A DNA stretch of 64,000 nucleotides from Octopus sinensis (GCF_006345805.1 NC_043000.1:15128001-15192000); one strand, 5' to 3'. Numbered from the stretch's first letter, positions 1 to 20,330 are shown. Notes: generated by a model from the sequence alone, not told the origin. Translations and numbers: made by a program.

Positions 1-258
1 ATCTAAGCCATGTTTTGAATATCTATACTTTCACTAGTATTACATTGATACTTTTGGTATTTTATGCTGTTGTATGTGCAATTACATTGGTCCACTCCTC
101 CACCTTATGTTTTATGTACGTTGTGTAACAGTGCAAATATTGAGTAGTTTTTACACTCTGATTCCTCAATAATAATAAGAATATACTGGTATTTTTATTG
201 TCATTGACTATTCTTTCATTTACCAGTTTGGTACCTAGCTGTCTCATATTTGTATTAG

Positions 259-470
259 CTCTTGATACCAACCTGCCTATCTGTACCTAGTTCTATGATG
301 CAAATTTCTTGTTTAAAGTGATCTTAACATTTAATTTTAATGGAAATGTTAATTTATGTTCCAAACACCATCTTAATTATGGCAAAGTCATTTTATTAAA
401 TTCTTAACTATTTTCAAGATTAATTGAAACAAAGGCAAAGTAATTTAACAGGAATAGGGTAACAAAAGGG
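259..470. mobile_element. Degenerate piggyBac-like MITE
   Basis: Ends ttag|ctcttgatacc ... ggtaacaaaaggg|ttca resemble the TTAA|CCCTTT(T)GxTACC family seen elsewhere in the window. Confidence 0.45.
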
Positions 471-657
471 TTCATATTTCAATTAAGACATTTTGTTAAA
501 AAATTTATTATACAAAACAACATATTACAGTGGGTAACCTTTGTCTTTTAAGATGTTAATTAAAAAGTTAATAATACCTTGCCTCCCTTTTGAACTGTTT
601 TGAAGTTAACTGAATTGTGTAAGCAATTTGTTGGAAATATAGTGATGTGTGGTTTAA

Positions 658-1086
658 CCCTTTGCCTGTCCAAAGCATTTTTATAAGTTTCTCCCAAATG
701 GCCATGCTTGTTTTTAAGTTTTTAGCTAGGCCTTGCCTCATACATTCTGAGTAATATAAAGCTTTTCTTTCATAAGTGCCAAGTTACTCTGGTGGTTGAA
801 AAAAAATCGGGAAAATGTATCATATATGAATGCATGGATCATCATCATCATCTTCGTTTAGCGTCCGCTTTCCATGCTAGCATGGGTTGGACGGTTCAAC
901 TGGGGTCTGGTAAGCCAGAAGGCTGCACCAGGCTCCAATCTGATCTGGCAATGTTTCTGCGGCTGGATGCCCTTCCTAACGCCAACCACTCCGTGAGTGT
1001 AGTGGGTGCTTTTTATGTGCCACCTGCACAGATGCCAGGGGTTACTGTCTTGTGTATCACATGTAATACATAGGACTGGGAAAGGA
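658..1086. mobile_element. piggyBac-like MITE with nested RTE 3' tail (about 838-1045)
   Basis: TTAA|ccctttgcctgtcc ... ggactgggaaagga|TTAA imperfect TIRs, TTAA TSD. Confidence 0.65.
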
Positions 1087-2016
1087 TTAACCTTTAAAAT
1101 GTACAAATTTATCCACACAACAGTCTTACTCCTGGCAGAATGAAGGAAAGGAGAGTATATATGTATGTGTATATGTATATACACATACATATATATGTAT
1201 GTATATACATATATATATACACATGCATATATATGTGTGTGTGTGTATATCATCATACATCCGTTTTCCATGCTAGCATGGGTTGGACGGTTCGACCCGG
1301 GTCTGGTAAGCCAGGAGGCTACACCAGGCTCCAGTCTGATCTGGCAGGGTTTCTACAGCTGGATGCCCTTCCTAACGCCAACCACTCTGAGAGTGTAGTG
1401 GGTGTTTTTTTACATGCCACCGGCATAGGGGCCAGAGCAGGCTGGCAAACAGCCACGATGCAGAGTATGATCAAGGCTTACTAAAAAATAAAAATCTAAC
1501 TTCATCCACATCTCCACACAAGCTGCAATGGTTTTGTGAGCACGTGGTTTGCACAATTTTTCACAGGTAGGAAGGAGGCAAGACATTTGATCGCAGTATC
1601 TCAACAATAATGCAAAGTTGAAAACATGTAGCACCTAATGTGTATGAATGAAAAGCATCGGCAAATAAACGACACAAGTGAAGATGGATTGTGACTGATG
1701 GAGCTCAAAGATTCATCACAGCACAAGTTGAAACCTTAATAATAATCTTGAGCAGAGAAAGCTTTACAAAGTGATCAACATGATGCTGCTTCTCTCACAA
1801 CTCAACTCAAGCTCAATGTGTTATTTAACTTGTGAATCTTGTATTGACCTGCATAGTTATATGTAGGTCTAGAAAAGTTGAATTTGGTGGGCAGTCATTC
1901 TCAATATGTAGGATTATCATCACCAACAACTTACTGGTATAACATGAGGGAGTGGTGTTTAACAAAATTGGTGGTACTAGTATTCGTGTGATTTAATTTC
2001 TGTTCTTCTGTTTTAG

Positions 2017-2052
2017 GCCGAGTCCAATGATGCTACAGATAACAATACTGAG
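2017..2052 (+). CDS. HMGA-like AT-hook protein, internal exon (AESNDATDNNTE); upstream exon(s) and start codon not found in window
   Basis: ttctgttttag|GCCGAG...ACTGAG|gtattt; 36 nt, phase 0, open and in frame with the next exon. Confidence 0.6.
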
Positions 2053-2363
2053 GTATTTTCTTTCTCAACTATAACTTTTATTAATATCTCATTTAAAATT
2101 TAAGCCATAATTCTCTTGATTATAAATCAAATGATCACCGTCCACAGATAAAGAGGGAAATGGTCTATATGTGAAACAAGTTTATTCAGTAAATTGAAAT
2201 TAAGATGAAGTAGCGTTATTTAGTTTTTGTAAACCACTTATGCAAGAAGAGTTTGCATTAATTAAAAGTTTTCTTGATTACCATATGTTCTTTCCATATG
2301 AATGTTATTACCCCTAGATAATTTTCCTCTGTCATTATGTTCATGTGTATTATTGCGCACGCA

Positions 2364-3043
2364 CAATGGTGAGCGCAGCTAACCAAAAAGTTAGCTTTGC
2401 TAACTGCTAATCTAACTAAAAAAGTTAGCCTCGCAAACGCTAAAAAAATTAGAAGGTAAAGCTAACTTATAACTGCTAACTTTTATCATACGAATTTAGC
2501 TTCGGTTTGGTTTGCTCTGAAACCCTTAAAAACAGACCAAGAGAGCTGAAATTTTCATGTTGAAGCTTAGATACAGAGCTTTCCAAAAAGGTATAGCATG
2601 CCAAGATCAAATGATGATAAAGGTGTACGCAAATAATTAAATGAACAAATGAAATTAAGCATTAGTTTTTTTCAGTCAACATACACTTTATTTACTGTAC
2701 AAAAAGTATTAAATCTAAAAGGTATAGCATAGGGATCATGCCAAAATCAGATGACAGTCAAGGTGTACTATTCTGGCTGGGCCTTCTCCATCACCTTGAC
2801 ATGATGATGGTTGCCCTTCATAAACAATAACGTGCCTGATGGATGCTTCAAGACATGCCCACAACAAACAGGAACAAACGTATGAATTTTGTTAGCAGAT
2901 TTAAAGTTTGCGGAACTAAATTTAGCTTGAGCTAATTCGTCTGTTAACAGTTTCCAAAGTTAGCAGAGATGCTAATCCACTAAAGGAAAAGTTAGCTTTA
3001 CTAATTAGCTGTTTGCAGATTAGCAGAACCGTGCCCGCTACTG
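2364..3043. mobile_element. hAT-type MITE
   Basis: TIR caatggtgagcgc / gtgcccgctactg; 8-bp TSD cgcacgca / tgcatgca (two C>T changes); subterminal gctaac repeats. Confidence 0.75.
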
Positions 3044-3328
3044 TGCATGCATATAGATATTCAATTAGTACAGATCTAGCAGAGATGTTTGAAGACCATA
3101 CTTTGTTGAGGTCTAATTAAATTAGGAAGGCATAGAGTAATTCTTAGAGGATAACATGAAATGAGTTGAGCAAAAGTTTGACAGAAACATGTAGCAAATA
3201 GGTGATATAAGAAAGAAACGAAAGTCATGGAAAGGGGTGGAGGAATTTCAATGTGAAAAAAAATTCATTGATTCTGTTCTCTTCAATATGTCTTTCAATA
3301 GTTTTGAATTTTTCTTTATTATTTTCAG

Positions 3329-3385
3329 GTGAAAGTTAAGAAAAGCCCTGGTAGACCTAGGAAACCAGAATCTGAAAAGAAGAAG
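3329..3385 (+). CDS. HMGA-like exon, AT-hook 1 (VKVKKSPGRPRKPESEKKK)
   Basis: attttcag| ... AAG|gtatgt; 57 nt, phase 0; PGRPRK core. Confidence 0.85.
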
Positions 3386-4783
3386 GTATGTACATACATA
3401 TTATATAGTTACTCTTGTTTATTATTATCTTAAGGGCTGTGAAGATTACTAAACTGGAATAGTTGCTTCAATCATCCATATTTTGTTGCCCTGCGTTTGA
3501 GTACCCCATCAGGAACAAATTTGCTTCATAAGTACATTGGACAGGAATCAAGTTCCTGTCAAAAATGTACTTGTGTTTCTGTAAATAATGAAATTTTACA
3601 GATATCTTGTTATGTCATCATAAGAATTATGTTCTGAATGTGTCTGTAGTTTAGTTTATATATGTATAATTTTAATATACTATGACCAGTTTTTTTGTTG
3701 GTTGGTGTGTCAAGAACTTTTACTTTTAATGAAAAGGTTTTAATGAAATGATTTTACTGAGACTTGGGTACTTTCACGTCAGGTGATGCATAAAACAATC
3801 AAAGTATTCTGACAGGATCAGTCAGTAACCATCCTACTGACTCCAGCAGGAGACAGTTGTGGCACTGTTTTCTTAGCTTGTGGTTTTTCCAGGGACAGGG
3901 TCCTGACCTGAAGCCTAGCCATGTGTATTTAGGAAAGAGACTATAAGTGGAGCTGTCTCTCTTGTCTACTAGCTGAGGTCCATAAAAGATAGTGTGGGTT
4001 GCTTTCAGTCTTGGACACTTAGCCAACATATCATGTACTTTAGCCCACCAGTTGAGGTGTGGTACCAGGGTGTGGCACTTGGAACCAGTGCATAAGAGAT
4101 TTAAGGAGTGAGTGAAAACCAATGATGCCTGTCCACCCGAACAGGTAGGGAGCAGCTTGGTATGCTTCAGAGGTACTATCTCTATCCAGAGTTTCCTGCA
4201 CTCTAATGAAATAACCTAGACGAAAATATTCAATTAATTGTAGGATCAATAAGGATATTTACCATGATGTGTATGAAATGATTAAGCAGACAGGAATTGT
4301 ATTATGTGAACAGTAAATGATCTGATGATGAATGTGGGATTTCAAGAAATCTGGCAATTTATCAAAATGCAAAATATACTGCACTTGTGTAACAAATGTT
4401 GCAACCCTTCGTATTGTTATTGACTTCTCTTTTTACGTGTTTCAGTCATTCAATTGTGACCATGCTGGAGCACTGCTTTCAAGGGTTTTAATTGAACAAT
4501 TTGACCCCAGTACTTATTTTTTTAAAGTCTGACAGTCTCTTTTGCTAAACCTCTAAAGTTGTGAGGACATAACAAACCAACGCAGTTACCAAGCAGTGGT
4601 GAGGAGACGCACACAATTTCCATGTATCAGATTCACTCACAAGACATTGGTTGGCCCAGGGTTATAGTAGAAGACACTTGTCCATGGTAACCTATCGGTG
4701 GAACTGAACCCCAAACCACATAGTTTGCAATTATTTAAGATATTGCTTTGTTTTTTCACAAAGCTTAGTCTATCAAGATGATA

Positions 4784-5156
4784 TCTTTATATATAAAACT
4801 GTAGTTGTGTGAGTGTCTGTCCCCTTCGATTTAGATTCCTAACTACTCCCACATTTTGCGGTGCAGTTTAATCAAAACTGGGTATCTTATAGTCGTGATT
4901 CATATCGAGCCCTTCTGGGTATTAGCATGAGTCTACGATTTTAAAAATAATTTACCATCATTTTTTTCCATTTTCATGCATATTTTTTTAAAGGGAAGTA
5001 ACTCTCTAAAAATGTCTACGATGAGTCAACGATTTTTAAAAAAATTTTACCATCATATTTTTTCTATTTTTAATGCATTTTTTGGCTATAACTCTCTAAA
5101 AATGTTGTATAGTTATTTCCCTTACAAACCCGAGCAACGCCGGGCGATACTGCTAG
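4784..5156 (+). mobile_element. Non-autonomous Helitron-like element
   Basis: A|TCtttatatataaaa ... hairpin CCCGagcaacgcCGGG ... CTAG|T. Confidence 0.75.
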
Positions 5157-5329
5157 TTTAAGTATAATGTAATGAAATATACATGATCATGAGGTAAATG
5201 ATTGCAGAATTTGAATTTTAAAAGCAGATTGATTACAAGTATTTAATGAATATATTAGTAAATATTTTGCTGTATTAACTTCATTTCTATGAATAGATAA
5301 AAAGTAATCTTCTGTATTCCCTTTTTCAG

Positions 5330-5377
5330 TGGGTTCCAACAGGTCGTTCAAGAGGAAGGCCAAGAATTCATCCAGTT
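5330..5377 (+). CDS. HMGA-like exon, AT-hook 2 (WVPTGRSRGRPRIHPV)
   Basis: ctttttcag| ... GTT|gtaagt; 48 nt, phase 0; resembles the VPTPKRPRGRP context of vertebrate HMGA. Confidence 0.88.
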
Positions 5378-5546
5378 GTAAGTTATATTACAACTTGTAA
5401 TTTCTACTTGGGCATATCTTCTATAATATTTGTGCTAATTATTGTAGTTACTATTTTTGAAATGTGGAAGACATATTTATTAAGCTGTATAATGCTTAAC
5501 CGAGTACATTTTTATAAATTTAGTGTCTTTATGTATATGATGGAGT

Positions 5547-5934
5547 GGAGGCGCAATGGCCCAGTGGTTAGGGCAGCGGACTCGTGGTCGTAGGATCGTG
5601 GTTTCGATTCCCAGACCGGGCGTTGTGAGTGTTTATTGAGCGAAAACACCTAAAGCTCCACGAGGCTCCGGCAGGGGATGGTGGTGATCCCTGCTGTACT
5701 CTTTCACCACAACTTTCTCTCACTCTTACTTCCTGTTTCTGTTGTACCTGTATTTCAAAGGGCCGGCCTTGTCACTCTCTGTGTCACGCTGAATATCCCC
5801 GAGAACTACGTTAAGGGTACACGTGTCTGTGGAGTACTCAGCCACTTACACGTTAATTTCACGAGCAGGCTGTTCCGTTGATCGGATCAGCCGGAACCCT
5901 CATCGTCGTAACCGATGGAGTGCTTCCATCCATC
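5547..5934 (+). mobile_element. tRNA-derived SINE, family A (young). Related copies: 13886-14268(-), 55615-55994(+); same head with other bodies at 38252-38548(-), 48349-48620(+), 57349-57650(+)
   Basis: Head ggaggcgcaatggcccagtggttagggcagcggactc...ggtttcgattccc with pol III A/B boxes; copies carry TSDs (e.g. atattcacaac at 55601/55995). Confidence 0.85.
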
Positions 5935-6959
5935 TGTGATGGAACTTTTTTGCTTTTTAAATCTACTCTAATTACAGGTAAATTCATTGAAATGTAAGTT
6001 TATTAAAATTTTGTTTAAATATCACCTTTTAGAATGAGTTCATCATCATATTTACATCAATATCCACTTTCCATGTTGGCATTGGTTAGGAGGGTTATCA
6101 CAACTCGAGCCAGTTCTTATTCAGAATTACTACTCTCTTAGACAGGTTGAAGGGCCACATCTTGCTTGTATGTCATTTTTGGCTTGGTTTCTATAGCTTG
6201 ATGCCCCTTCTATCACCAACCACTTTACAGTGTACTTGGTGTATTTTGTCATGATGCCAAAACTAGGGTCAGTCATCTCCTCAACTAGACTAAAGGGTTC
6301 TCGTGACTTAAATTGTCTCTACTCACTGGTTACTTTACAATGTTAGTTGGGTGCATTTTATTATGGCATCAGCCTTTGTGAAGTGGCCTTATACTTAAGT
6401 AGAGTCCTTGCTACTGTAGGATGTGTTTTACTCAAGGCAATCTGATTGAGTAAAACAATAAGTAGATCTGTGACAGAATACTAAGATAAAAGAAGCAGGA
6501 ATATGATGGTTGGGAGAGATAGAAAAGGCGAGAAATAAAGGTGGACAATGGTAAGGGTGAGTGAGGGATATCTGTAATGTGGTCTGGAGGGATGGAGTGA
6601 TTACTGGAAGCATAGAAATGGCAGTGAGCCAGGCAAAGTGCTTAGTATTTCATCTATCTTTCTGTTATGAGGTCAACTTTGCCTTTCATCCTTTTGGAGT
6701 CAATAAAATAAGTACTAGTTGAGTACTGGGGTCAATGTAATCAGCTTTACTCCTGGGTATGAGTACAAAAATCTGCCTCCCTTTGCCAAACCATGTTGAA
6801 TTGTTGTGGTAGTGTAGGCTCATCAGACCAGCATGATCTCAAGCTATTCTCTGGTGGAGAGAACATACTGAGGCCCTCATCTTGCAGTGGACTGAACACA
6901 AGTAATTCAATCCAATCCAGTTGAAAAGTGTGATGGTAAGAGTGTAACAGGTACCATAG

Positions 6960-7139
6960 TTACTCTTTTACTTGTTTCAGTCATTTGACTGTGGCCATGC
7001 TGGAGCATCGACCCCAGGACTTATTCTTTGTAAGCCTAGTACTTATTCTGCCAGTCTCTTTTGTTGAATTGCCAAGTTATGGGGGCGTAAACACACCAGC
7101 ATCGGTTGTCAAGCGATGTTGAGGGGACAAACATAGACT

Positions 7140-7198
<59 letters not shown>

Positions 7199-7320
7199 GA
7201 CGGGCTTCTTTCAGTTTACGCCTACCAAATCCACTCACAAGGCTTTGGTCAGCCCGAGGCTATAGTAGAAGACACTTACCCAAGGTGTCACGCAGTGGGA
7301 CTGAACCCAGAACCATAGGT
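6960..7320 (-). mobile_element. tRNA-derived SINE, family B with internal (TA/CA)n. Further copies about 18150-18480, 19670-20080, 36390-36750, 46320-46650, 51360-51785, 53520-53920, 57880-58255, 61780-62150
   Basis: Repeated body ttactcttttacttgtttcagtc...ctaccaaatccactcacaaggctttgg...gggactgaacccggaacc. Confidence 0.85.
7139..7198. repeat. (CA)n(TA)n microsatellite inside a SINE; similar tracts near 1155-1245, 47645-47830, 48278-48345, 51570-51625
   Basis: Directly visible dinucleotide runs. Confidence 0.95.
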
Positions 7321-8713
7321 TTGTGATGGGTGGATGAGGGAAGAGTATTTAATATATGCAAATCTAGTACCATCTCTGATTACATAAGTAACGTGAAAAA
7401 AAGGTAAGTGATAGAAATGAATTAGCTAGTATTCATATACATTAAGTAGATGAATTGTAGCATTTTCAGGGGAGCTTGAGCCTGTAATACAGGCTACGCA
7501 TAAAGGTAAAATAGCTTTTAAAAAAAGTTTGTTTTATAAAATGAAAATTGATATGATACTTTTTTATAGCAATTTGTGAACACTAGTGTTGTTGGTTACA
7601 TGTTTCCAATTGGACAATCCCTGATTTACTGTGTATTTTTGATGGAGTGTGAAACCTAATGCAAGGAACTTCACCTGTAAAGTTTTTTTTTTTGTTTTCT
7701 TGGTGTTTATTTCCTACACCAATATAAATCTATAAAGTGTAAATATATATATATATATGTGTGTGTATACACTGATATACATACACATTCGACTTTTCAC
7801 ACAGTTTCCCTCTACCAAATTCTACTTGCGAGTTATTATTGAACATGAGGCTAAGGTAAAAGATACTTGCCCAGTACTGTGTTGTATTGGAATTGAACTT
7901 TGAGTCCATGAAGTTACAAAGCAAGCTTTTTAACCATGCAGTCGTGCCAATCAAAATTTCATGGAAAAATGTAGAATATCCTCCTTTCATAATGCATTCT
8001 TGCAGAATATGTACAGCAGAAAGTTGTTTCAGTTGACTGCTCATCAGGTGTTTTCTTTTTCCTACTGTAAGCATTTGCAGAATACAACTGGGAAATCATA
8101 TTCTCTGCACCCAATCTTGCAATCTTTGAATTTGTTTCCCTTTCCCTCTTGTTTTACAGAGGTTGGCTGAATTTAAAGTTATATCCTTCTTTCAGACTTT
8201 TTTCCTTTCTCACAACTGACTCTCCACCTTGCCTCTTTATTTTATAATTTTTTTTACAAATGATTTGTTCTCAATTGCACTGCAACATCAACTTGAAAAC
8301 TGAAAATGGTTGTATTACTTTTGAACTTCTCTTTATTCAGTATATAGTAAATAATCATAAAAATATTCATATTTACTGTATATTAAACCAAGTATTACCA
8401 CTACTTACTGCCCAATCTTTCAACCAAGTTACAGCGTCTCATCTGATTCAACCAATCTATACAGTCTATGTTACCATTGTAATTGATATTTGCAAATGGT
8501 GTACCATTTTCATTCATATGTCATGCATATGTAGACAGAGAATGAATTTACCTCTTATATCTGTGCAGTCAGTAGCAAATTTCCTTTCTGCTTTTAGATT
8601 ACCTTTTTATTTTTAAAACTGTATTATTTGTATGTTGTCACAGTTAAATCCTCTACATGCCTGATTGAACTATGGAACTGATCAAAATTTAATATTCAGC
8701 TTCAGTTATGGTA

Positions 8714-9226
8714 TGAGAGTAATAATTTCAAGACCACATCATACCCTTGGTCACACTGACAAGCACAGTTGTTTCTCTTCCCTTCTGCAGTGAAAGTTAA
8801 AACCACAGCAGCACCTAACTTTTGCATCAGAGATTTTATTCTTTTACATCCCATTTTGTAGGCTCTTTTGGCCTGTAGTAACCGGCCTTCATGTCTGGTA
8901 TTCCTTTTGTCCTTGACTTAATTGTTCCTTTGTACAGAGTCCAGAAGAGTCTTGTATAATTAATGGGTTGTAACATTTTCTTTCCATACTGGGTGCACTA
9001 TTTCTGAAATGATAGATTTTTTATTCATTTAGTTATTTGTGCCTTTTCTTTACTTTCTTAGGATCATAACAAGGTAAAGAAACCTAGAGGAAGACCACGT
9101 ATAAAGCCTGTAAGTTGTGCTTTCTTTAAAAACATTTTTAGTTGTGTTTCAATTCTTCCAGGATATGGGAATTATGTAGTTTTTTTTCTATAAAGATTTT
9201 GCTGTAGGATTATGTTTGGTATGCTA
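8714..9226 (+). repeat. Local segmental duplication, copy 1 (contains exon 9062-9109)
   Basis: About 510 bp matching 11111-11357 plus 12630-12887 at roughly 95% by eye. Confidence 0.9.
9062..9109 (+). CDS. HMGA-like exon, AT-hook 3 (DHNKVKKPRGRPRIKP)
   Basis: tactttcttag| ... CCT|gtaagt; 48 nt, phase 0. Confidence 0.82.
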
Positions 9227-10105
9227 GGTATTGTAGTATAAATTGGTTCTTGTAACTCTTTCATCACTATATCTCTAATTAAAATAAATGTCTAATAGTA
9301 ATTAATGAGTGGTTTTGCTTCAGTAACTCCTATCAGTGTTCAGATTTTCAGAAGTATGCCATTAGGCACATATCCTCGGGGAAATTGGATGGAAATAAAG
9401 GAGATGTTTTTAAACAAAATAGCTTTCTATTTCTAATCAAATGTTCCATATTAGAATCAGAAATATCTTTTAGGAAGGAATTTTAAAATTTGTTTATAAC
9501 TGAGGATGACAAAAGTAAAACAGTGTGCCATTCTAAAATTAAACACAAATAATACAGTACCACTAGCACCAGATTTTAGTTCGTTATGACTAACTATTAC
9601 CAAAGTAGCCATATTTTGTTCTTTTGAAGTTGAGTTTGTTACAAACAATCATCATTGTCATCATTTGAATGTCCACCTTCCATGCTGGCATGGATTGGAC
9701 AGTTTGACAGGATCTGATGGACCCAAGAATGGCATTATGCTCCAGTGTCTGCTTTAGCATGGTTTCCTAATGCCAACCACTTCACAGTGTGTAATTGGTG
9801 CTTTTTTTTTTTTACCACCCAGCACTAGTGAGGTCACCATGTAGCTTGCAAGATTATGAACCCTGGGTGGGGTGTAGGAGCTTTATTCGAGAATGTGAGA
9901 AAAAAGGGCCTGAGCAGAATACGCTTCTTGCTGGAGGACACATTCTGTTTTATGTTGAGTCAGAGCATATAAAATGTCGTTTATATATCCAGTTTGTAGA
10001 TTAAATCTAAATAGTGTTCAATTAGTCTTTATTATTGTATTTGTTGTTTTTTCATTATTAGTTAATTTGTTATACATTACTTATGTGATTTATTTGTTTT
10101 TCCAG

Positions 10106-10153
10106 ATGGTGCATAAAGAAAAAAGACCAAGGGGCAGACCACGCAAAAATGCA
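10106..10153 (+). CDS. HMGA-like exon, AT-hook 4 (MVHKEKRPRGRPRKNA)
   Basis: tttttccag| ... GCA|gtaagt; 48 nt, phase 0; KRPRGRPRK canonical AT-hook. Confidence 0.88.
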
Positions 10154-11357
10154 GTAAGTCTATTTTCTCTTTAGATTAGATTGACTTGAATGTTAGTATT
10201 TAGTCACAGCAAATCTATGATTAAAGGGTCACTAGCTGTGACAAAACTATTTTTTTATTCAGACCTAGTTATTCTGCAATGTGGTGCCCTTTTGTGCTGT
10301 CAAAAGTAATGCTTGTCTATTCAGATTGTTTTGAATTAATCCTGTATATCTCATGGCTTTGAGATTTTGATGAGGAATCTGTTAATTTTTAGAATGATAT
10401 TGTAGGATTGGTGTAAGATCCTAAATCGGGCTATCATCATCATCATTGTTTAATGTCCATTTTCCATGCTAGCATGGGTTGGACAGTTCGATCAGGGTCT
10501 GGGAAGCCAGGAGGCTGCACCAGGCTCCAGTCTGATCTGGCAGTGTTTCTACAGCTGGATGCCCTTCCTAATGCCAACCACTCCATGAGTGTAGTGGGTG
10601 CTTTTTACGTACCACAGTTTGAACATAAAACAGGTGGAATATTTTGGCTGGATATGGCCTATTTAAATGCTAAAAAGTTAAACCTTGTCATGTTTAGTGA
10701 TGGTATTTCTCTGAAGATGGTAGATGCATGCTTGAGAGCATTGTAAGTACCTCATTTGTACTTCAGAATGGTTATTTTGGCAACCATATGTACAAAAGCA
10801 CAAATTTGAAGATTTGTTCACAAAATTATCTGGAGTTTTATTTCTAAAAATTTGTAGTATTTTTCTTCCAAAGTCCTTAACTTCACTGCTGTGATCATGT
10901 GATTGACCAAACAAATATTGTTATGAATTGCTGATCACAATGTGCTTTGCATTGTTTTAGCTTTTAAATGATGCTACTGCACTGGCTCGGTGAGCAGGCC
11001 AACATTCCCTTTGATTGGAAGATTACTCCTTTGCAGGTAGGGTTACAGCTGAGTGGGCTGGAGTGGAGTGAAATGGAGTGTTTTGCTAAGAACACTGCAG
11101 CAATTGCAAGAGAGTAATAATTTCAAGACCACATCATACCCTTGGTCACACTCACAAGCACAGTTGTTTCTCTTCCCTTCTGCAGTGAAAGTTAAAACCA
11201 CTGCAGCACCTAACTTTTGCATCAGAGATTTTATTCTTTTACATCCCATTTTGTAGGCTCTTTTGGCCTGTAGTAACCGGCCTTTATGTCTGGTATTCCT
11301 TTTGTCCTTGACTTAATTGTCCATTGTACAGAGTCCAGAAGAGTTTTGTCTAATTAA

Positions 11358-12629
11358 CCCTTTCGTTACTATATTTCTGACCAAAATACACCCCTCATGA
11401 GTTTCAATTAAATTGATGATGATGATGATGATGAATCATGAATTTAGGCTTGTTTCATTAAATAACTGTAACTTTTTTACTTATCAACATATTAATGTAT
11501 TTGGAACATAATTAAAGAAAGGGTTCTTAATCAATTCTATTGCATAACTTTTGTCTCAAAGTGACTTTAATTACAGGTAAATTGAGCAAAAGGTAAAAAT
11601 ATTAAAATTTTAAAATGAGCAAAAGGTAAAAATATTAAAATTTTGTTTAAACATCACCATAGAAAATGAATCATCAGCTAATATTCAAATGGGTATGCAA
11701 CAAGATTTTGATAAAGAAGAATTGTGCACATCACTAGATCATCAGTTGAATTTAATGCACAACAGGTGTACCATAAAAGTGGAATAAACTGGAATCCACC
11801 GCAAGTTTGACCGAACTAAAGAAATCGGTCAAAAAATAATATACGGCCCTGGTTATGGTATGGAAGTGATAAATTCCAGACCACATTGTTCCCTAAGCCA
11901 TGCTGACTAACATTAGTTTCCCTTTATAAAAACTTAATCCATGCAGTACCCAGTATTTACTTCACAAATTTTCCGAACTTTGATCCCCCATTTTGTGTTT
12001 GTTTACAATCTGCGAAACAGTTTGCTTCCACAGTGATCACTCCAAACAAGCATACTGAAAAAAATAAAGTCTAATGGTTTCGCTTCCTAAGAAAGACTAT
12101 AGATAAACTCTATCTCCTCAGAAAAATTGCTAATAAAAACATTTTCAAAGTTTTTTTACTTCATTCCGATGTAAAGTCGTCTTTGCTGTCGCCAACGCCG
12201 CTTTGTTTCTTCGGAATCGCTGCTTTCGGTTAACGGATAAAAAAAATATCCTATTCATTATTGTACATCACGTGCTTTTGGACCTCATTCATTCTTTTTC
12301 TCGATATCTCCCTATTTTCTGTTGAAAAAGCTTTAAATTCGGTATCAATGCTTGATAACATGAAACTCCTATCCATTTTCAAAGTTGAAGAAAAATCGAT
12401 GCCGAAAAAAATGTAGAAAGAAATCTTCCAAAATTCACTGAGTTGAGATATCACGTCAAGCAATGTCGGATACTATAAGCCAACTATTTACAAAGTGAAA
12501 TCACATGTTTTAACGAATGTACCAACGAGATTTAGGCTCAAATTTACATTTAAATAACAACAGGTTCTCTCGGCCAGGTTGGTATTATGAACCAAAAAAT
12601 TTTACCCGGCCGGGTTAGTAACGAAAGGG
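11358..12629 (-). mobile_element. Internally deleted piggyBac-type DNA transposon inserted in duplication copy 2
   Basis: TTAA|CCCTTTCGTTACT ... AGTAACGAAAGGG|TTAA perfect 13-bp TIR; minus-strand remnant KWGIKVRKICEVNTGYC at about 11941-11994 resembles the piggyBac transposase K(Y/W)GIK...TGY motif; empty TTAA site in copy 1. Confidence 0.88.
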
Positions 12630-12731
12630 TTAATGGGTTGTAACATTTTCTTTCCATACTGGGTGCACTATTTCTGAAATGATAAACTTTTCATTCATTT
12701 AGTTATTTGTGCCTTTTCTTTACTTTCTTAG

Positions 12732-12773
12732 GATATGGTAAAGAAATCTAGAGGAAGACCACGTATAAAGCCT
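12732..12773 (+). CDS. HMGA-like exon, AT-hook 5 (DMVKKSRGRPRIKP), paralogue of exon 9062-9109
   Basis: tactttcttag| ... CCT|gtaagc; 42 nt, phase 0; flanking intron sequence duplicated with 8714-9226. Confidence 0.75.
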
Positions 12774-13743
12774 GTAAGCTGTGCTTTCTTTAAAAACATT
12801 TTTAGATGTTTCAATTCTTCCAGGATATGGGAATTATGTAGTTTTTTTTCTATAAAGATTTTGCTGTAGGATTATGTTTGGTATGCTCGGCCACACACCT
12901 TCACTGTTGTAATTCATAAAATTTAGTCAGCCTACCATTTTGAAATTTATGAATCTGGTCTTCCACTTGTGTAGGCATAGTACTATATCACTGTAGCATA
13001 AGTGTTTTTCTAGAACATTGGACGAATATCAAATTAATATTCATTTATTCAAGTTCTGTTCAATGGTTCCTAGAGATGCTTTTATGATGAAGGCTGTTTA
13101 AAACAATCATGCCAAATATTGATTTCAAATTTTGGGGCAAGGCCAGCAGTTTTGGGGAAAGGGTAAATCGATTACGTTGACCCCAGTGCTCAACTGATCA
13201 TCATCATCGTTTAACGTCTGCTTTCCATGCTAGCATGGGTTGGATGGTTTGACCAGGGTCTGGGAAGCCAGGAGGCTGCACCAGCCTCCAGTCTGATCTG
13301 GCAGTGTTTCTACAGCTGGATGCCCTTCCTAACGCCAACCACTCTGTGAGTGTAGTGGGTGCTTTTTACGTGCCACCGGCACAGAAGCCAGTCATGGCGG
13401 CGCTGGCAACGGCTACGTTTGGATGCTTCTTTTTCATGGCACTGGTATCACAACTACAATTTCCATTGATTTTTGATCAATTTCGATACTTATTTTATTG
13501 CCCCTTTAAATGATGAAAGGCAAAATCAACACACACTCACAATGGCTTCTTTCAGTTTCCATCTACCAAATGCACACACAAGGCTTTTGTCAGCCTGGGG
13601 TTATAGAAAAAAAAATACTTGCCCAAAGTGCCATGTAGTGGGACTGAACCCACAGTGGTTAGAAAGCAAACTTAACCGTACAGCCATACCTGATCAAATA
13701 CATTCATTCGAATGTTATGTAATCATTTTTCTCTCTTTTTCAG

Positions 13744-13773
13744 ACTGAAGATGGTGAGAACAAGCCGAAAAAG
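13744..13773 (+). CDS. HMGA-like linker micro-exon (TEDGENKPKK)
   Basis: ctctctttttcag| ... AAG|gtattg; 30 nt, phase 0. Confidence 0.7.
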
Positions 13774-13885
13774 GTATTGAAGTTTCCCTTTTAACCTCTT
13801 TCAGTTTCGTTTTGGGAAATTTACATTTTTATGTTGAGGGAGGTGTTACAATTACAACATGGTGTCTGTCATTTTGCCATTACTA

Positions 13886-14268
13886 ATAGGAGCACTCCGT
13901 CGGTTGCGACGATGAGGGTCCCTGCTGATACGATCAACGGAACAGCTTGCTCGTGGAATTAACGTGCAAGTGGCTGAGCACTCCACAGACACGTGTACTC
14001 TTAACGTAGTTCTCGGGGATATTCAGCGTGACACAGAGAGTGACAAGGCCGGCCCCTTGAAATACAGGTACAACAGAAACAGGAAGAAAGAGCGAGAGAA
14101 AGTTGTGGTGAAAGAGTACAGCAGGGTTCACCACCACCCCCTGCCGGAGCCTCGTGGAGCTTTAGGTGTTTTCGCTCAATAAACACTCACAATGCCCGGT
14201 CTGGGAATCGAAACCGCGATCCTACGACCGCGAGTCCGCTGCCCTAACCACTGGGCCATTGCGCCTCC
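13886..14268 (-). mobile_element. tRNA-derived SINE family A, antisense in the HMGA-like intron
   Basis: 13-bp TSD tttgccattacta (13873-13885 / 14269-14281); about 95% identical to 5547-5934 by eye. Confidence 0.9.
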
Positions 14269-14441
14269 TTTGCCATTACTATTGAAGGCCAGATTAGATA
14301 AGATTAATGTGAATGTATAATTTGTTTTAAATGCCTTTTTGGTACTTGTTTATGTACTCGGTAGAGCACTGAATTTCATAGTTTTGGAGAAGTGTTGTTG
14401 TTCTAATTTATAATCCTGTGTTAACCATTTCTTTCTCTCAG

Positions 14442-14489
14442 GTAACTGGGCGTGGAAAGAGGAGACCAGGAAGGCCCAGGAAAGAATAA
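14442..14489 (+). CDS. HMGA-like last coding exon, AT-hook 6 and stop (VTGRGKRRPGRPRKE*)
   Basis: tttctctcag| ... TAA|gtaaga; 48 nt; stop codon sits immediately before a donor site. Confidence 0.85.
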   Translation, partial: VTGRGKRRPGRPRKE

Positions 14490-14931
14490 GTAAGACATTT
14501 CAGTAATTTTATTAAAACTCTATCATACATTGAACTTTTTGGTTATTTCAAAGTGACATGTTTGATCAATTCTCCGGTATTTCTCTCACATTTTTTTTTT
14601 TTTTTTTTTTTTAATATACATGTTTCAGGTTTTATAAGAGTGACTCTGAAATGAATTTTGAATACAATAAATAAATAGAAATCAAGTGTGACTCATGGTG
14701 GACTTAAAACTGGATTTTCTGTTTTCAAGTGTGTAAACAATATTTGGCAAAATATTTCCATCAATCCATCTATTTTCTCCACCCACTATTTATAGGAAGC
14801 TTGTAGGTGTAGTCTTCAGGCACATCCTGTATAGAGTTCTATCAGCAGTAACCATCAATTCTTGGTTAATCTCAAAATTAAGATTTACTGGTTTAAATCC
14901 TTTCTACAAAGACTTATTGATGGCAATTTAA

Positions 14932-15148
14932 CCATTTAGCATTCAGATTACTCTGTTAAACACAATGCTTATTTATTCACATTGTTTTGTACTAATCATG
15001 CATTATCTCATAGCTTTGAGGTTTCAAAGAGGTGATTGTTTATTTTTAGAATGACATTGTAGGGTAGGTGGGAGAGCCTGGATCTGGCCAGTTTCAATGT
15101 CAAAACAGAATATTTGGGCCGGATATGGCTGGTTTAAATGCTAAAGGG
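14932..15148. mobile_element. piggyBac-like MITE (ccctttagcatt family; partial copies near 10620-10680, 51172-51350, 63850-64000)
   Basis: TTAA|ccatttagcatt ... aatgctaaaggg|TTAA. Confidence 0.75.
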
Positions 15149-15601
15149 TTAAGGAGCAATCATCTTTTAACCTCCAGCTTCCATGCTAGCAAAGGCCAGA
15201 TAATTTGACATGATCTGAGAGGTCCAAGGGCCACTTCATGCTTCAATATCAGCTTTGGCTTATGTGACCTTTTAATTTGCAGAAAATTCAAACTCTTTTT
15301 TTCATAGAGGATCAAAATCTTCCTTCCATGAACATTTGATATACAACTTCAGTTATTAATTAGATCAGATTACTGAAGATTTATTTTCATATAATGATTT
15401 CAAAAGGTAATCAACAAGAGAACATGAGAATTTTTCCTCACGGTGATTCTGCATGATAGAAAAAATCCTAAATCAGTTGCTAAAATGTTAAGAAATGGAT
15501 GATATTGTGAGTTAAATAATAACAATTTGTTTATGAGTATGTTGTCTCCTTCCATTGTACTGAGAATTCATAAAGTAAAATGTATATGTTTTTGTTTTCA
15601 G

Positions 15602-17400
15602 GATCCCTTTAAATACATCTGAATAATGCTAGGAGCAGTATGTTGGCATCAAAAGACTTCTCATCTTCATCTATATCACCTAATAGTCTTACATCACCTA
15701 AGTCGGGTCCAAGAATGGACTAAAGCCTTTTTTTTTAAACGTGGCTGCGTGCAAGTGACTGTGTGTATGCATGCAATTTGACTGTTTTCAATTCCAGTTC
15801 ATATATAAGAATCTTTTATTCAAAATATGCACTATTTTCATCCTTTTAGCTAAATTTAAAATAAAAAAAAAAACGTTTATAGGTAAACTAATCAGATAAA
15901 TTCTGCTGGCACAGCTGTGGTATAGCATCATCCTCATCATCATCAGATACACTGTTTGTTAATCAGAGTTTATGCTGCATAAGTTAGGATGCAACAGATA
16001 TCTGAGGTAATTAGTATGTTTATCACTGGCATGTTATTATTCATCTGCTTAGAACAAATAGTAACATGAAATGTGAAAACTAATGCACTGCCATCAAACC
16101 TTCCCATTAGAAAATCTAGTATTTTATTTTCTCTCTTGATTTGTTTTTATAGATAACCTGTCCATTTTGATTGATTTATATAATAAATTAATTCTTAGTG
16201 AATTGGTAAAATTTTGTCTCTTCTGTGTTATGCATTATTTTCATTATTACTGTTATTGCCAATTATTAACATTTCTTATTAGTTAGTTGATAGAGAAATG
16301 GGCTTTCTATCACAAGAACATTTACTCAGAAATCAAGGACATTGTTAACGAGGGATTTTTTTTTCTATATTCTCTTAGTCTTTCTCTCTATTTTTGACCA
16401 ATTTAAACACTAAATTGAAAGTGATAAATTTAACATGTATTAAAATATTTTTTATAAAGCTGAAATATTTTCTCAATTACGCATCTCCCAGCTAATAATG
16501 TCTAGGATCATTGATTCAGATTGTAGAGGATCGTTTACTGAATCTCATTGCCTTCTTATCTGTGGTCCATTGCTTTAGTAATATCTCTTCACTTTGCTTT
16601 GACATTCCTCTTTCATAGAATAAGCTACAATCTAGCTTTTTTTTTTTATTATCATCACATCTTTTCTAGCCTATCACAATTATACAAGAAATAGCCATCT
16701 CCTTGGTGTATGTGTGTACGTTTGAGAGCTGAATGATCCTTATAATCTTTTCAGATTATTCTAAATTTACTCCATCTTTGGATTCATCAACCAAAATATT
16801 TTTATTGAAACAAAAAAAGAGAAAAGGTGTGACCTGCTGTTGTCCTTGGTTCATCACTAAATTTGTTGCTTTTATCAAAGCTTGAGAATGAGTATTTCAC
16901 CTCTTCTCCTTCCTTTTAAAAGCCCTAACAATGAAATTTTCAGAATTTTACAAAGCATGACACAATTACTTATGCATACGCTTTGTTTTCACATAGTAGT
17001 GTCTCCGTTTTAATTTCAAATTTGCCTGTAGTATTCCTTATTTCAATTTTTATCTTCCTCTCAATTTTGTAATGTTTAACTTTGCTGCTTTTTTTTTTTT
17101 AAGTCAGTGCGAGCAATAGGAGGTGATTTATTGCATTTCATTTTGGGAATTGAAGTTAGATGAAATTTAAGCAGTGACTCTCATTAATTTTTTTTTTTTT
17201 AAATAAAAAAGACAAAAAAATACCTTAGTATTTTGTCACTGAATTTTAATTGTAAGATATAGTTTTAATTTTGTTTTGCTTTTAAATTCCATTGCCAAAC
17301 TATTTTTAAATTTCAAGAATGTCTTGTTTATCAAGCTGTACAGGAAATCAATGTTATTTTTATTTGATACAAGGGTTTTTAGATTGTATTCATTTTCAAG
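15602..17400 (+). other. Probable non-coding terminal exon / long 3'UTR of the HMGA-like gene (3' end approximate)
   Basis: Acceptor gtttttgttttcag|GATCCC at 15601/15602; about 1.8 kb U-rich stretch with no recognisable SINE or LINE; AATAAA near 16180 and 17202. Confidence 0.5.
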
Positions 17401-19329: not shown

Positions 19330-20330
19330 AATTATGGGAGCACAAGTTCATAGTGATCAGAGGCTGACTGGAGGGTATCTGTAAGAGCAGCCATAAAATT
19401 AATTCATTCAAATGTGGAGAGCTCTCGAGTAGTAGCTGATAACTTCCATTACTTAGGTGACTTGTTACAAAATCCTAGTAAGAGTAAAAATGAAATGGAA
19501 GTCCATGGAGCTACTCAAATGAAGAGTGAAGTGCATGATAACCTGTGTGTGAAGTATGGTGTTGGATAGTAAGTGAAATATGTCCACTGATTCTGGATTG
19601 TTTACAAAAGCTAGAAAGGAATGAAGTAGACATTCTTTGTGGGATGTTTAATATTAGTGTACATAAACAGGCGTAGGAGTGGCTTTGTGGTAAGTAGCTT
19701 GCTTGCCAACCACATGGTTCTAGGTTCAGTCTCACTGTGTGGCACCTTGGGCAAGTGTTTTCTACTATAGCCTTGGGACGACCAAAGCCTTGTGAGTGGA
19801 TTTGGTAGACAGAAAATGAAAGAAGCCTATCTATATGTGTATGTATGTATATATATATGCATATACATACATACATATACGTCTGTGTTTGTCCTCCCCA
19901 ACATCACTTGACAACCGATGCTGGTGTATTTACGTCCCCGTAACTTAGCGGTTCGGCAAAAGAGACCGATAGAATAAGTACGAGGCTTACAAAGAATAAG
20001 TCCTGGGGTCGATTTGCTCGACTAAAGGCAGTGTTCCAGCATGGCCACAGACAAATGACTGAAACAAGTAAAAGAGTAAACAACAGAATGCATACTGAGA
20101 AAAAGGCTGACTATAAAAAAGAATCACATGTAGCATGCAAACGACTAGAAAACTGACATGGAGGAGGAAGACTTAAATAAGAGTGCAAATGGAAGAATCA
20201 TGTAGACTACATGAGAAGTGGTGAAAGCTAATCCCCAGAGGCTGAACTTCACTGAGATGGAGAAAGGACTACAAGTAGCATGCTGTGCTAGAGGAGACCT
20301 ATCAAAGTACAACATGCAATCATGGAAAGG
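19330..20330 (+). mobile_element. Old degraded RTE LINE remnant interrupted by a family B SINE
   Basis: Remnant gtagtagctgataacttccattacttaggtgac (VVxDNFHYLGD) and a C-terminal-like segment similar to the 41200-41947 RTE. Confidence 0.4.

What the first reader, a model, noticed from the sequence alone, without database searches (positions are those of the whole stretch)
2017..14489. Modular HMGA-like protein: six AT-hooks, one per phase-0 micro-exon, no acidic tail
Seen: eight GT-AG micro-exons (36, 57, 48, 48, 48, 42, 30, 48 nt), all phase 0, give a 118-aa partial protein with six GRP hooks; four of the six hook exons are exactly 48 nt, and the protein ends on a hook. Established: vertebrate HMGA1/2 have three hooks plus an acidic C-terminal tail, and Drosophila D1 is a many-hook satellite-binding, chromocenter-bundling protein. 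Inference: a lineage-specific HMGA expanded by repeated duplication of a roughly 48-nt hook exon. Any exon can be skipped in frame, so splicing could tune DNA-binding valency in a genome full of (AT)n tracts. The ORF track misses all but one of these exons.
Basis: partly seen in the sequence, partly recalled or inferred. Interest (0 to 1): 0.72.

Follow-up and report, generated by a model that had tools for sequence, protein, structure and literature searches.

The report
Octopus tail-less six-hook HMGA-like gene
The eight tiny exons are real and belong to an already annotated Octopus sinensis gene for a small DNA-binding protein with six AT-hooks; one hook per exon is an old animal layout, and only the sixth hook exon is a recent duplication.

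Summary
Eight AG/GT-bounded, phase-0 exons on the + strand (36, 57, 48, 48, 48, 42, 30, 48 nt) encode 118 aa with six GRP hooks. The TAA stop is the last codon of the last hook exon.

The window is Octopus sinensis (100% identical to CM016862.1). With two upstream exons outside the window, the protein equals RefSeq XP_029635208.1, "high mobility group protein HMGI-C isoform X1" (144 aa). RefSeq also lists isoforms that skip E6 (X2) or E5+E6 (X4). An O. bimaculoides cDNA confirms every shared junction, including splicing straight after the stop into a 3'UTR exon at 15602.

- One hook per roughly 45-57-nt phase-0 exon also occurs in a bivalve and an annelid relative, and is described for human HMGA2. 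The layout is ancestral.
- Only one duplication is recent. The E4 unit was copied to give E6 after the O. bimaculoides split and before the O. sinensis/O. vulgaris split. A piggyBac-like MITE then interrupted the copy.
- Loss of the acidic tail is real in octopus. The bivalve Tegillarca, the annelid and an unidentified relative keep a tail.

Close precedents are Xenopus XHMG-AT-hook and Drosophila D1. This is an ordinary new member of a known kind.

The parts
2017..2052 (+). E1 (third coding exon of the gene), 36 nt, AESNDATDNNTE. An acidic, S/T-rich patch with no hook.
   Evidence: for coordinates and AG/GT; the O. bimaculoides cDNA L007 aligns 2015-2054 at 97.5%. Part of XP_029635208.1.
3329..3385 (+). 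E2, 57 nt, VKVKKSPGRPRKPESEKKK. Hook 1, with a variant PGRP core.
   Evidence: The homologous hook is KRGRGRPRKPE..KKK in P0003, P0004, P0007 and P0023.
5330..5377 (+). E3, 48 nt, WVPTGRSRGRPRIHPV. Hook 2, of the 'TGRxRGRP' type.
   Evidence: The same hook type occurs in Sinanodonta (YISTGRPRGRPRV). In Lamellibrachia it sits in a 48-nt phase-0 exon (MSSGRPRGRPKKSHVE).
9062..9109 (+). E4, 48 nt, DHNKVKKPRGRPRIKP. Hook 3, and the parent of E6.
10106..10153 (+). E5, 48 nt, MVHKEKRPRGRPRKNA. Hook 4, and the only stretch that passes Pfam AT_hook on its own.
   Evidence: Absent from RefSeq isoform X4.
12732..12773 (+). E6, 42 nt, DMVKKSRGRPRIKP. Hook 5. A recent duplicate of E4 with a 6-nt in-frame shortening at its 5' end. 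It is a cassette exon: present in RefSeq X1 and X3, absent from X2 and X4.
   Evidence: Absent from the O. bimaculoides genome locus and cDNA.
13744..13773 (+). E7, 30 nt, TEDGENKPKK. A hook-less spacer exon, comparable in place and size to the 11-aa linker exon 4 of human HMGA2.
   Evidence: PMC11291832 for the HMGA2 linker exon.
14442..14489 (+). E8, 48 nt including TAA, VTGRGKRRPGRPRKE*. Hook 6 (PGRP core). The stop codon is the last codon of the exon and is followed directly by the donor GTAAGA.
   Evidence: the cDNA joins position 14489/14490 to 15602. The KKVT(S/G)RG..GRP motif is conserved in P0007 and Sinanodonta.
15602..16319 (+). Terminal non-coding exon (3'UTR). The 3' end was not determined. 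AATAAA occurs at 15860 and 16182.
   Evidence: L007 bases 463-1166 align to window 15602-16319 at 93%. for the poly(A) signals. The O. vulgaris model CAI9722082 also uses the 14489-to-15602 junction (reading).
8715..9228 (+). Parental 514-bp duplication unit, made of E4 plus flanking intron.
11110..12890 (+). Daughter duplication unit carrying E6 (11110-11357 plus 12630-12890), split by a 1272-bp insertion.
   Evidence: 97.2% and 94.1% identity by blastn; 97.2% over 505 aligned columns, with the tree ((sin1,vul1),(sin2,vul2)),bim.
11358..12629 (.). piggyBac-like non-autonomous element (MITE) with a TTAA target-site duplication and terminal inverted repeats CCCTTTCGTTACTA / TAGTAACGAAAGGG. It lies about 100 nt upstream of the E6 acceptor.
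   Evidence: Sequence. The empty site TAATTAATGGG is visible in copy 1. The insertion is present in O. vulgaris too, as a 1276-nt gap.

Best explanation
Region 2017-16319 is the body of the single annotated HMGA-like gene of Octopus sinensis (RefSeq 'HMGI-C', LOC115210677).

Structure (shown):
- There are ten coding micro-exons, all phase 0. Two of them lie upstream of the window. A 3'UTR exon follows.
- The product is 144 aa, very basic (pI about 11.6, 35% K+R) and predicted disordered.
- Exon A holds a conserved N-terminus (MSSRNAKRGRKD). E1 holds a short acidic patch. E2-E6 and E8 each hold one AT-hook. E7 is a 10-aa spacer. There is no acidic C-terminal tail.

[quoted passage not shown] Five or six hooks on one flexible chain give multivalent, architectural chromatin binding. 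Without the C-terminal acidic tail that modulates vertebrate HMGA, the protein would behave more like tail-less multi-hook proteins (Xenopus XHMG-AT-hook, Drosophila D1).

Evolution (shown): one hook per micro-exon is inherited from a lophotrochozoan or older HMGA gene. Octopus keeps five old hook exons. The sixth, E6, arose from a roughly 0.5-kb duplication of the E4 unit in the O. sinensis/O. vulgaris lineage.

Splicing: E6 is annotated as a cassette exon, so isoforms carry 6 or 5 hooks (annotation, not verified by reads here). The 5-hook form restores the ancestral O. bimaculoides-type protein.
For: - Exon coordinates and splice sites.
- Exact identity to XP_029635208.1, and isoforms X1-X4.
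- Window 100% identical to O. sinensis CM016862.1.
- Upstream exons A and B.
- O. bimaculoides cDNA L007 is 98-100% identical to its genome locus, spliced at all orthologous sites, and joins the stop-bearing exon to a UTR exon.
- O. bimaculoides has a single E4 unit and five hooks.
- Duplication timing.
- Hook-per-exon layout in Tegillarca (exons of 69, 57, 42 nt and others) and in Lamellibrachia (48, 45, 27, 48, 42, 54 nt, phase 0).
- Acidic tails in those relatives and in P0007, but none in octopus.
- Only Pfam AT_hook matches.
- AF2 gives pTM 0.15 and no secondary structure.
- HMGA2 exon-to-function map: PMC11291832.
- Tail-less multi-hook precedent with exon duplication and isoforms: PMC3723657.
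Against: - No O. sinensis or O. vulgaris reads were examined. E6 inclusion and skipping rest on RefSeq models.
- Isoform X4 (E4 joined to E7) could be a mapping artefact, because the last 26 nt of E4 and E6 are identical.
- The O. vulgaris 'X2' model is a dubious frameshifted splice.
- DNA binding, nuclear localisation and any effect of hook number are untested.
- Orthology to vertebrate HMGA1/2 is not demonstrated. Similarity is largely low-complexity hook sequence, and a defining HMGA feature, the acidic tail, is absent.
- Two hooks have PGRP rather than RGRP cores and may bind weakly.
Confidence: 0.85

Rival explanations
1. One reading: a cephalopod-specific HMGA whose six hooks arose by repeated duplication of a roughly 48-nt hook exon, with free exon skipping tuning valency for (AT)n tracts.
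For: - E6 is a true duplicate of E4.
- Four hook exons are 48 nt.
- Squid-like transcripts P0003 and P0004 show an independent duplication of a three-hook module.
- RefSeq isoforms differ in hook number.
Against: - E2, E3, E4 and E8 are distinct hook types shared with bivalve, gastropod, annelid and unidentified relatives.
- 48-nt phase-0 hook exons exist in an annelid.
- Apart from E4 and E6, no hook exons share intron-level or nucleotide similarity.
- Only 13 (AT)n runs of at least 12 nt occur in 64 kb, which is unremarkable.
Confidence: 0.12
2. E6 is a young, effectively neutral duplicate that is mostly skipped. The working protein is the 5-hook form (X2, equivalent to the O. bimaculoides type), and 'valency tuning' has no biological meaning.
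For: - The duplication is recent: 97% identity between copies.
- The E6 donor is GTAAGC against GTAAGT for E4.
- A 1.27-kb MITE sits about 100 nt upstream of the E6 acceptor.
- The X2 isoform restores the ancestral protein.
Against: - E6 keeps an intact frame, acceptor and donor in both O. sinensis and O. vulgaris.
- RefSeq ranks the E6-containing form as X1.
- At 42 nt there is no power to test selection.
Confidence: 0.3
3. It is not an HMGA orthologue at all, but a convergent multi-AT-hook protein like Drosophila D1 or Xenopus XHMG-AT-hook that RefSeq named by best hit.
For: - It has no acidic tail.
- Hook similarity is low-complexity.
- The Xenopus multi-hook protein P0125 and D1-like names appear among weak hits.
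- The authors of PMC3723657 exclude tail-less multi-hook proteins from the HMGA family proper.
Against: - Relatives with the same N-terminus, hook order and 'KKVTSRG' C-terminal motif do carry acidic tails (P0007). More distant relatives with the same hook-per-exon layout (Tegillarca, Lamellibrachia) also carry tails, and that layout is shared with HMGA2.
- No other HMGA-like Octopus protein surfaced in three database searches.
Confidence: 0.2

Closest known systems
Vertebrate HMGA2 (HMGI-C) and HMGA1
   Same: - A small, basic, disordered protein made of AT-hooks.
- Each hook is encoded on its own exon, followed by a short (10-11 aa) hook-less spacer exon (PMC11291832, citing Chau et al. 1995).
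- RefSeq names the octopus gene HMGI-C.
- From memory only: the internal HMGA2 exons (87, 51, 33 nt) are also multiples of three.
   Different: - Six (or five) hooks instead of three.
- The exon after the spacer encodes another hook plus the stop, rather than the CK2-phosphorylated acidic tail.
- The stop sits at the very end of the penultimate exon.
- The only acidic patch is N-terminal (E1).
- The tryptophan follows the first hook exon, not the third hook.
Xenopus XHMG-AT-hook1-3 (Macri et al. 2013, PMC3723657)
   Same: - Non-canonical HMGA-like proteins with 6-8 hooks and no acidic tail.
- Hook number was increased by internal duplication, including a species-specific duplicated exon ('exon 7bis').
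- Isoforms with different hook numbers arise from one locus by differential splicing.
   Different: - The Xenopus proteins are larger (about 327 aa).
- No specific sequence relationship: P0125 matches at E = 2e-3, through hooks only.
- The Xenopus proteins coexist with a canonical Hmga2. No canonical tail-bearing HMGA was found for Octopus.
Drosophila D1 chromosomal protein
   Same: A multi-AT-hook protein. UniRef labels the bivalve relative P0018 'Chromosomal protein D1-like'. D1 and HMGA1 bundle AT-rich satellites into chromocenters (PMC5957525, listed).
   Different: D1 has about ten hooks and is larger (from memory). No satellite binding or chromocenter role is shown for the octopus protein, and no sequence relationship beyond the hooks was tested.
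Lophotrochozoan HMGA-like genes (Tegillarca granosa KUTeg_022132, Lamellibrachia satsuma LSAT2_031651, Sinanodonta woodiana ACJMK2_016001)
   Same: - The same hook types and order.
- The same micro-exon, phase-0, one-hook-per-exon layout in Tegillarca and Lamellibrachia. The Sinanodonta locus could not be fetched.
- The terminal 'K(V/I)TSRG..GRP' hook is shared with Sinanodonta.
   Different: Tegillarca and Lamellibrachia keep an acidic C-terminal tail (6-10 D/E in the last 20 aa). Sinanodonta keeps only a short, weakly acidic end (3 of 20). Octopus has 1 of 20. Hook numbers differ: 5, 6 and about 10.

Membership tests
HMGA (HMGI/Y, HMGI-C) family | Three or more AT-hooks (GRP core flanked by basic residues) | tested here: met
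   Six GRP cores: four RGRP and two PGRP. Pfam AT_hook scores 18.0 bits against a cut-off of 17.4.
HMGA (HMGI/Y, HMGI-C) family | Small protein (about 100-150 aa) with no other domain | tested here: met
   144 aa. AT_hook is the only Pfam family at E<=1.
HMGA (HMGI/Y, HMGI-C) family | Intrinsically disordered | tested here: met
   AF2 on a 5-sequence alignment gives pTM 0.15, mean pLDDT 61 and no secondary structure apart from one 3-residue turn. This is a prediction only.
HMGA (HMGI/Y, HMGI-C) family | Acidic, phosphorylatable C-terminal tail | tested here: not met
   - The last 20 aa contain 1 D/E.
- TAA ends the last hook exon.
- No D/E-rich open frame occurs on the + strand anywhere in 1-17000.
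- The cDNA splices from the stop into a non-coding exon.
HMGA (HMGI/Y, HMGI-C) family | Gene structure: each hook on its own exon, then a short linker exon | tested here: met
   compared with the HMGA2 description in PMC11291832.
HMGA (HMGI/Y, HMGI-C) family | Orthology with chordate HMGA (phylogeny, synteny, the W after hook 3 for the HMGA2 type) | tested here: inconclusive
   - W is present but follows hook 1 (KKK|W).
- The downstream neighbour is a Ribosomal_L11-family gene, which from memory is not an HMGA1/2 neighbour.
- No phylogeny is possible on hook-only similarity.
HMGA (HMGI/Y, HMGI-C) family | Minor-groove binding to AT-rich DNA, architectural function | not testable with these tools
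   Needs EMSA, footprinting or CUT&RUN.
Non-canonical multi-AT-hook proteins (Xenopus XHMG-AT-hook type) | At least six hooks, no acidic tail, hook number varied by exon duplication and alternative splicing | tested here: met
   against PMC3723657. This is a resemblance in kind, not a shown homology.
Drosophila D1-type satellite bundlers | Binding and bundling of AT-rich pericentromeric satellites | not testable with these tools
   No localisation or binding data. Only the multi-hook architecture is shared.

The most novel reading that the evidence does not exclude
Coleoid cephalopods have lost the acidic regulatory tail of the ancestral lophotrochozoan HMGA and now change hook number quickly and independently. 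Octopus did so by a single-exon duplication (E4 to E6) that is still a cassette exon. A squid-like lineage did so by duplicating a three-hook module while its last hook decays. On this reading, hook valency of the only HMGA-like architectural protein is an evolving, splice-regulated parameter in these repeat-rich genomes.
Probability: 0.3. Interest if true: 0.4.

Novelty: new member of a known kind. Interest (0 to 1): 0.22.

Why it matters
The value is mainly in annotation and evolution. The locus shows that the HMGA one-hook-per-micro-exon design predates the protostome-deuterostome split or is at least lophotrochozoan-wide. It shows that the acidic tail can be lost. It also shows that hook number grows by exon-unit duplication, here caught at a young, datable stage with the new exon annotated as alternatively spliced. 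That makes a small, clean natural example of exon duplication giving a cassette exon, and a possible handle on how AT-hook valency affects chromatin binding. It does not open a new kind of system. The gene is already in RefSeq, and the architecture has Xenopus and Drosophila precedents.

Tried and rejected
- ARAGORN on 1-20000, to test whether the tRNA-looking SINE heads are tRNA genes: none found.
- Literature search for the SRA runs behind P0004 and P0007 (SRR7548197, SRR32924703), to name their organisms: no paper found. Those transcripts remain taxonomically unassigned. A third database search with P0007 found no named close relative and no tail-bearing Octopus protein.
- Genome loci for Sinanodonta P0018 and Patella P0019: not on record. 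Their exon maps could not be made, so Tegillarca and Lamellibrachia were used instead.
- Scan for a hidden acidic-tail exon on the + strand of 1-17000 at >=7/12 D/E, and of 13774-17000 at >=6/12: nothing.
- Search for further hook exons in the introns or on the other strand: none. The only other GRGRPRK in the window (41330, -) carries a GRGRPRKTW motif of the transposon type.
- Literature search for cephalopod or mollusc HMGA: nothing specific.
- The idea that P0002 (108 aa, starting 'MKPE') represents an alternative start was rejected. Its cDNA contains the full upstream ATG in frame, so the short ORF is a gene-caller choice.
- The O. vulgaris 'isoform X2' was rejected as evidence for a different C-terminus. 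It needs a GT inside E6 and an AG inside E7, and it frameshifts.

Full report

Yes. Reading the window and locating the exon strings by script gives eight + strand segments:
- E1, 2017-2052 (36 nt)
- E2, 3329-3385 (57 nt)
- E3, 5330-5377 (48 nt)
- E4, 9062-9109 (48 nt)
- E5, 10106-10153 (48 nt)
- E6, 12732-12773 (42 nt)
- E7, 13744-13773 (30 nt)
- E8, 14442-14489 (48 nt, including TAA)

Each is preceded by a pyrimidine tract plus AG and followed by GTA/GTR. All lengths are multiples of three. The joined product is AESNDATDNNTE | VKVKKSPGRPRKPESEKKK | WVPTGRSRGRPRIHPV | DHNKVKKPRGRPRIKP | MVHKEKRPRGRPRKNA | DMVKKSRGRPRIKP | TEDGENKPKK | VTGRGKRRPGRPRKE*. That is 118 aa with six GRP cores.

A six-frame search of all 64 kb for GRP[RK] finds twelve hits. 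Six are these exons. Of the other six, one (41330, -) carries a GRGRPRKTW motif that looks transposon-derived; the rest were not characterised.

Most of the exons lie in stop-to-stop frames of only 23-45 codons. This is why an ORF track would miss them.

**2. What is it?**

A protein search with the 118 aa hit an Octopus cluster at 1.9e-47. An exact-sequence look-up followed, using the 118 aa prefixed with the N-terminus seen in the O. vulgaris hit. It shows that the protein is XP_029635208.1, 'high mobility group protein HMGI-C isoform X1 [Octopus sinensis]', 144 aa.

The window is 100% identical over 15,489 nt to O. sinensis CM016862.1 (GCA_006345805.1). It is about 97% identical to O. vulgaris.

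Two further coding micro-exons lie upstream of the window, both phase 0:
- Exon A: MSSRNAKRGRKDPPNSE, 51 nt coding, at window-relative -5127.
- Exon B: IVAKEMKPE, 27 nt, at window-relative -957.

Transcript evidence comes from L007, a Logan contig from run SRR32601320. L007 is 98-100% identical to the O. bimaculoides genome locus, exon by exon. It is spliced at the orthologous sites of A, B, E1-E5, E7 and E8. It then joins the base after the stop codon to an exon that starts at window 15602 and runs to at least 16319. So the stop codon really is the last codon of the penultimate exon, and the last exon is 3'UTR.

No D/E-rich open frame exists on the + strand anywhere in 1-17000. The absence of an acidic tail is therefore genuine, not an artefact of a partial model.

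**3. Properties of the protein**

- Composition: 144 aa, 50 K+R against 17 D+E, pI about 11.6.
- Domains: AT_hook is the only Pfam family matched.
- Structure: AlphaFold2 on a five-sequence alignment gives pTM 0.15 and essentially no secondary structure. This fits an intrinsically disordered protein.
- Hook cores: four are canonical RGRP (E3-E6). E2 and E8 have PGRP.
- Acidic residues: the only cluster is N-terminal, in E1 (AESNDATDNNTE). It aligns with EEES..ASDE-type patches in relatives.

**4. How old is the layout?**

O. bimaculoides has exons A, B, E1-E5, E7 and E8 at orthologous places, with five hooks and 130 aa. It has only one copy of the E4 unit.

*The E4-to-E6 duplication.* In the window, a 514-bp unit containing E4 (8715-9228) recurs at 11110-11357 plus 12630-12890 and carries E6. 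A five-way alignment gives these identities:
- O. sinensis against O. vulgaris orthologous copies: 98.8-99.0%.
- Paralogous copies within a species: 97.2-97.4%.
- Every copy against the single O. bimaculoides unit: 93.0-93.5%.

The duplication therefore happened after the O. bimaculoides split and before the O. sinensis/O. vulgaris split.

The daughter copy was later hit by a 1272-bp element with a TTAA target-site duplication and CCCTTTCGTTAC... terminal inverted repeats, which is piggyBac-like. O. vulgaris carries it too. No other pair of hook exons shares nucleotide or intron similarity.

*Relatives outside Octopus.* Transcripts P0003 and P0004 (organism not identified) start MTSRSKRGRKD, close to the octopus N-terminus. 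They carry six hooks, made by duplication of a three-hook module, and their last hook has decayed to KRSKPKK. Other relatives:

| Protein | Organism | Hooks | C-terminus |
|---|---|---|---|
| P0007 | unidentified | 8 | acidic tail |
| P0018 | bivalve Sinanodonta | about 10 | ..KITSRGDIRRSRGRPPKKVQEKNATESID |
| P0023 | bivalve Tegillarca | 5 | acidic tail |
| P0022 | annelid Lamellibrachia | 6 | strongly acidic tail |

*Exon maps of two relatives.* I mapped two of these proteins onto their genome loci:
- Tegillarca has one hook per small exon: 69 nt, about 57 nt and 42 nt, with the last hook fused to the tail.
- Lamellibrachia has 48-, 45-, 48- and 54-nt hook exons with 27- and 42-nt spacer exons. 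The cleanly bounded internal exons are multiples of three.

Human HMGA2 is described in the same way. Exons 1-3 each encode a hook, exon 4 encodes an 11-aa linker and exon 5 encodes the acidic tail (PMC11291832, citing Chau et al. 1995).

The modular, phase-0, one-hook-per-micro-exon design is therefore ancestral. It is not a cephalopod invention, and only one of the six hooks is a lineage-specific addition.

**5. Splicing**

RefSeq lists four O. sinensis isoforms:
- X1: all exons, six hooks.
- X2: lacks E6, five hooks. This reproduces the O. bimaculoides-type protein.
- X3: a later start.
- X4: E4 joined to E7, four hooks.

I could not inspect reads. X2 is unambiguous in sequence terms. X4 should be treated with caution, because the last 26 nt of E4 and E6 are identical, so short reads across E6-E7 can be mis-assigned to E4-E7.

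The O. vulgaris entry CAI9722082 ('X2') requires a GT inside E6 and an AG inside E7 and frameshifts through the stop. It is useful only as independent support for the 14489-to-15602 junction.

**6. Mechanism**

Shown:
- The gene structure and the transcript-supported junctions.
- The six hooks and the lack of a tail.
- The recent exon duplication.
- The annotated isoforms.

Inferred from family knowledge:
- Each hook binds the minor groove of AT tracts.
- Several hooks on a disordered chain give multivalent, architectural binding.
- Loss of the C-terminal acidic tail removes the intramolecular and CK2-regulated modulation known for vertebrate HMGA. The protein should then act more like tail-less multi-hook proteins.
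- The conserved N-terminal acidic patch might substitute for the tail. This is speculation.
- Inclusion or skipping of E6 toggles between six and five hooks.

**7. Comparison and novelty**

The closest precedent in kind is Xenopus XHMG-AT-hook1-3. These proteins have 6-8 hooks and no acidic tail, and carry internal duplications including a species-specific duplicated exon. Isoforms with different hook numbers come from one locus (PMC3723657). Those authors place such proteins outside the canonical HMGA family.

Drosophila D1 is the other multi-hook reference. The HMGA review states that Hmga genes occur throughout animals (PMC7013770). I found no paper on cephalopod HMGA.

Because the acidic tail was tested and is not present, I file the gene as a non-canonical, tail-less HMGA-like gene, not a canonical HMGA. 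It most probably descends from the lophotrochozoan HMGA gene.

**8. Verdict**

- Observation: confirmed.
- Interpretation: partly supported.
- Novelty: a new member of a known kind, and the gene model is already public.
- Interest: low to moderate (0.22). It rests on the datable E4-to-E6 exon duplication with cassette behaviour and on tail loss in cephalopods.

Noticed in passing
window 5547-5924 (+) and 13891-14268 (-): An inverted pair of about 378-bp SINE-like repeats, 95% identical. They lie in the introns that bracket E4-E7, whose exons sum to 168 nt, a multiple of three. Such inverted pairs can favour looping-out, exon skipping or back-splicing (circRNA). More copies lie at 55613-55996, 38356-38547, 48347-48501 and 57347-57534. 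ARAGORN calls no tRNA in either arm of the pair (only 1-20000 was scanned).
   Followed up: partly
window 11358-12629: A 1272-bp piggyBac-like non-autonomous element with a TTAA target-site duplication and terminal inverted repeats CCCTTTCGTTACTA / TAGTAACGAAAGGG. It is inserted in the duplicated E4 unit about 100 nt upstream of the E6 acceptor. It is shared with O. vulgaris and has no second copy in the window.
   Followed up: partly
window 15989-16006 (= L001 33391): The O. vulgaris annotation starts the next gene (Ribosomal_L11 family, 156 aa) with a tiny exon, MQQISE|gt. That exon lies inside the HMGA-like 3'UTR exon as defined by the O. bimaculoides cDNA. It is probably an ab initio artefact or a read-through model.
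   Followed up: partly
window 23852-24484 (+) and about 41330 (-): Retroelement remnants. One is an ORF with Pfam RVT_1 (E = 9e-26). The other is a GRGRPRKTW motif on the minus strand, of the kind seen at retrotransposon ORF ends. The same motif occurs in the O. bimaculoides intron (L002 13131, -). These account for some of the non-gene GRP hits.
   Followed up: partly
window 841-1038, 1257-1435, 10433-10615, 13197-13391: Four copies, 88-92% identical, of a roughly 180-bp octopus interspersed repeat (..CATCATCATC..TCCATGCTAGCATGGGTTGGA..) in the introns and upstream region. The (AT)22 run at 7153-7196 sits next to another repeat. In all there are 13 (AT)n runs of at least 12 nt in 64 kb.
   Followed up: no
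L003 / L004 (Logan transcripts SRR7548197, SRR32924703): P0004 and P0003 carry a duplicated three-hook module and a decayed last hook (KRSKPKK). P0007 keeps the 'KKVTSRGRGRPKK' hook followed by acidic stretches and further hooks. The source organisms could not be identified. They would date the tail loss.
   Followed up: partly
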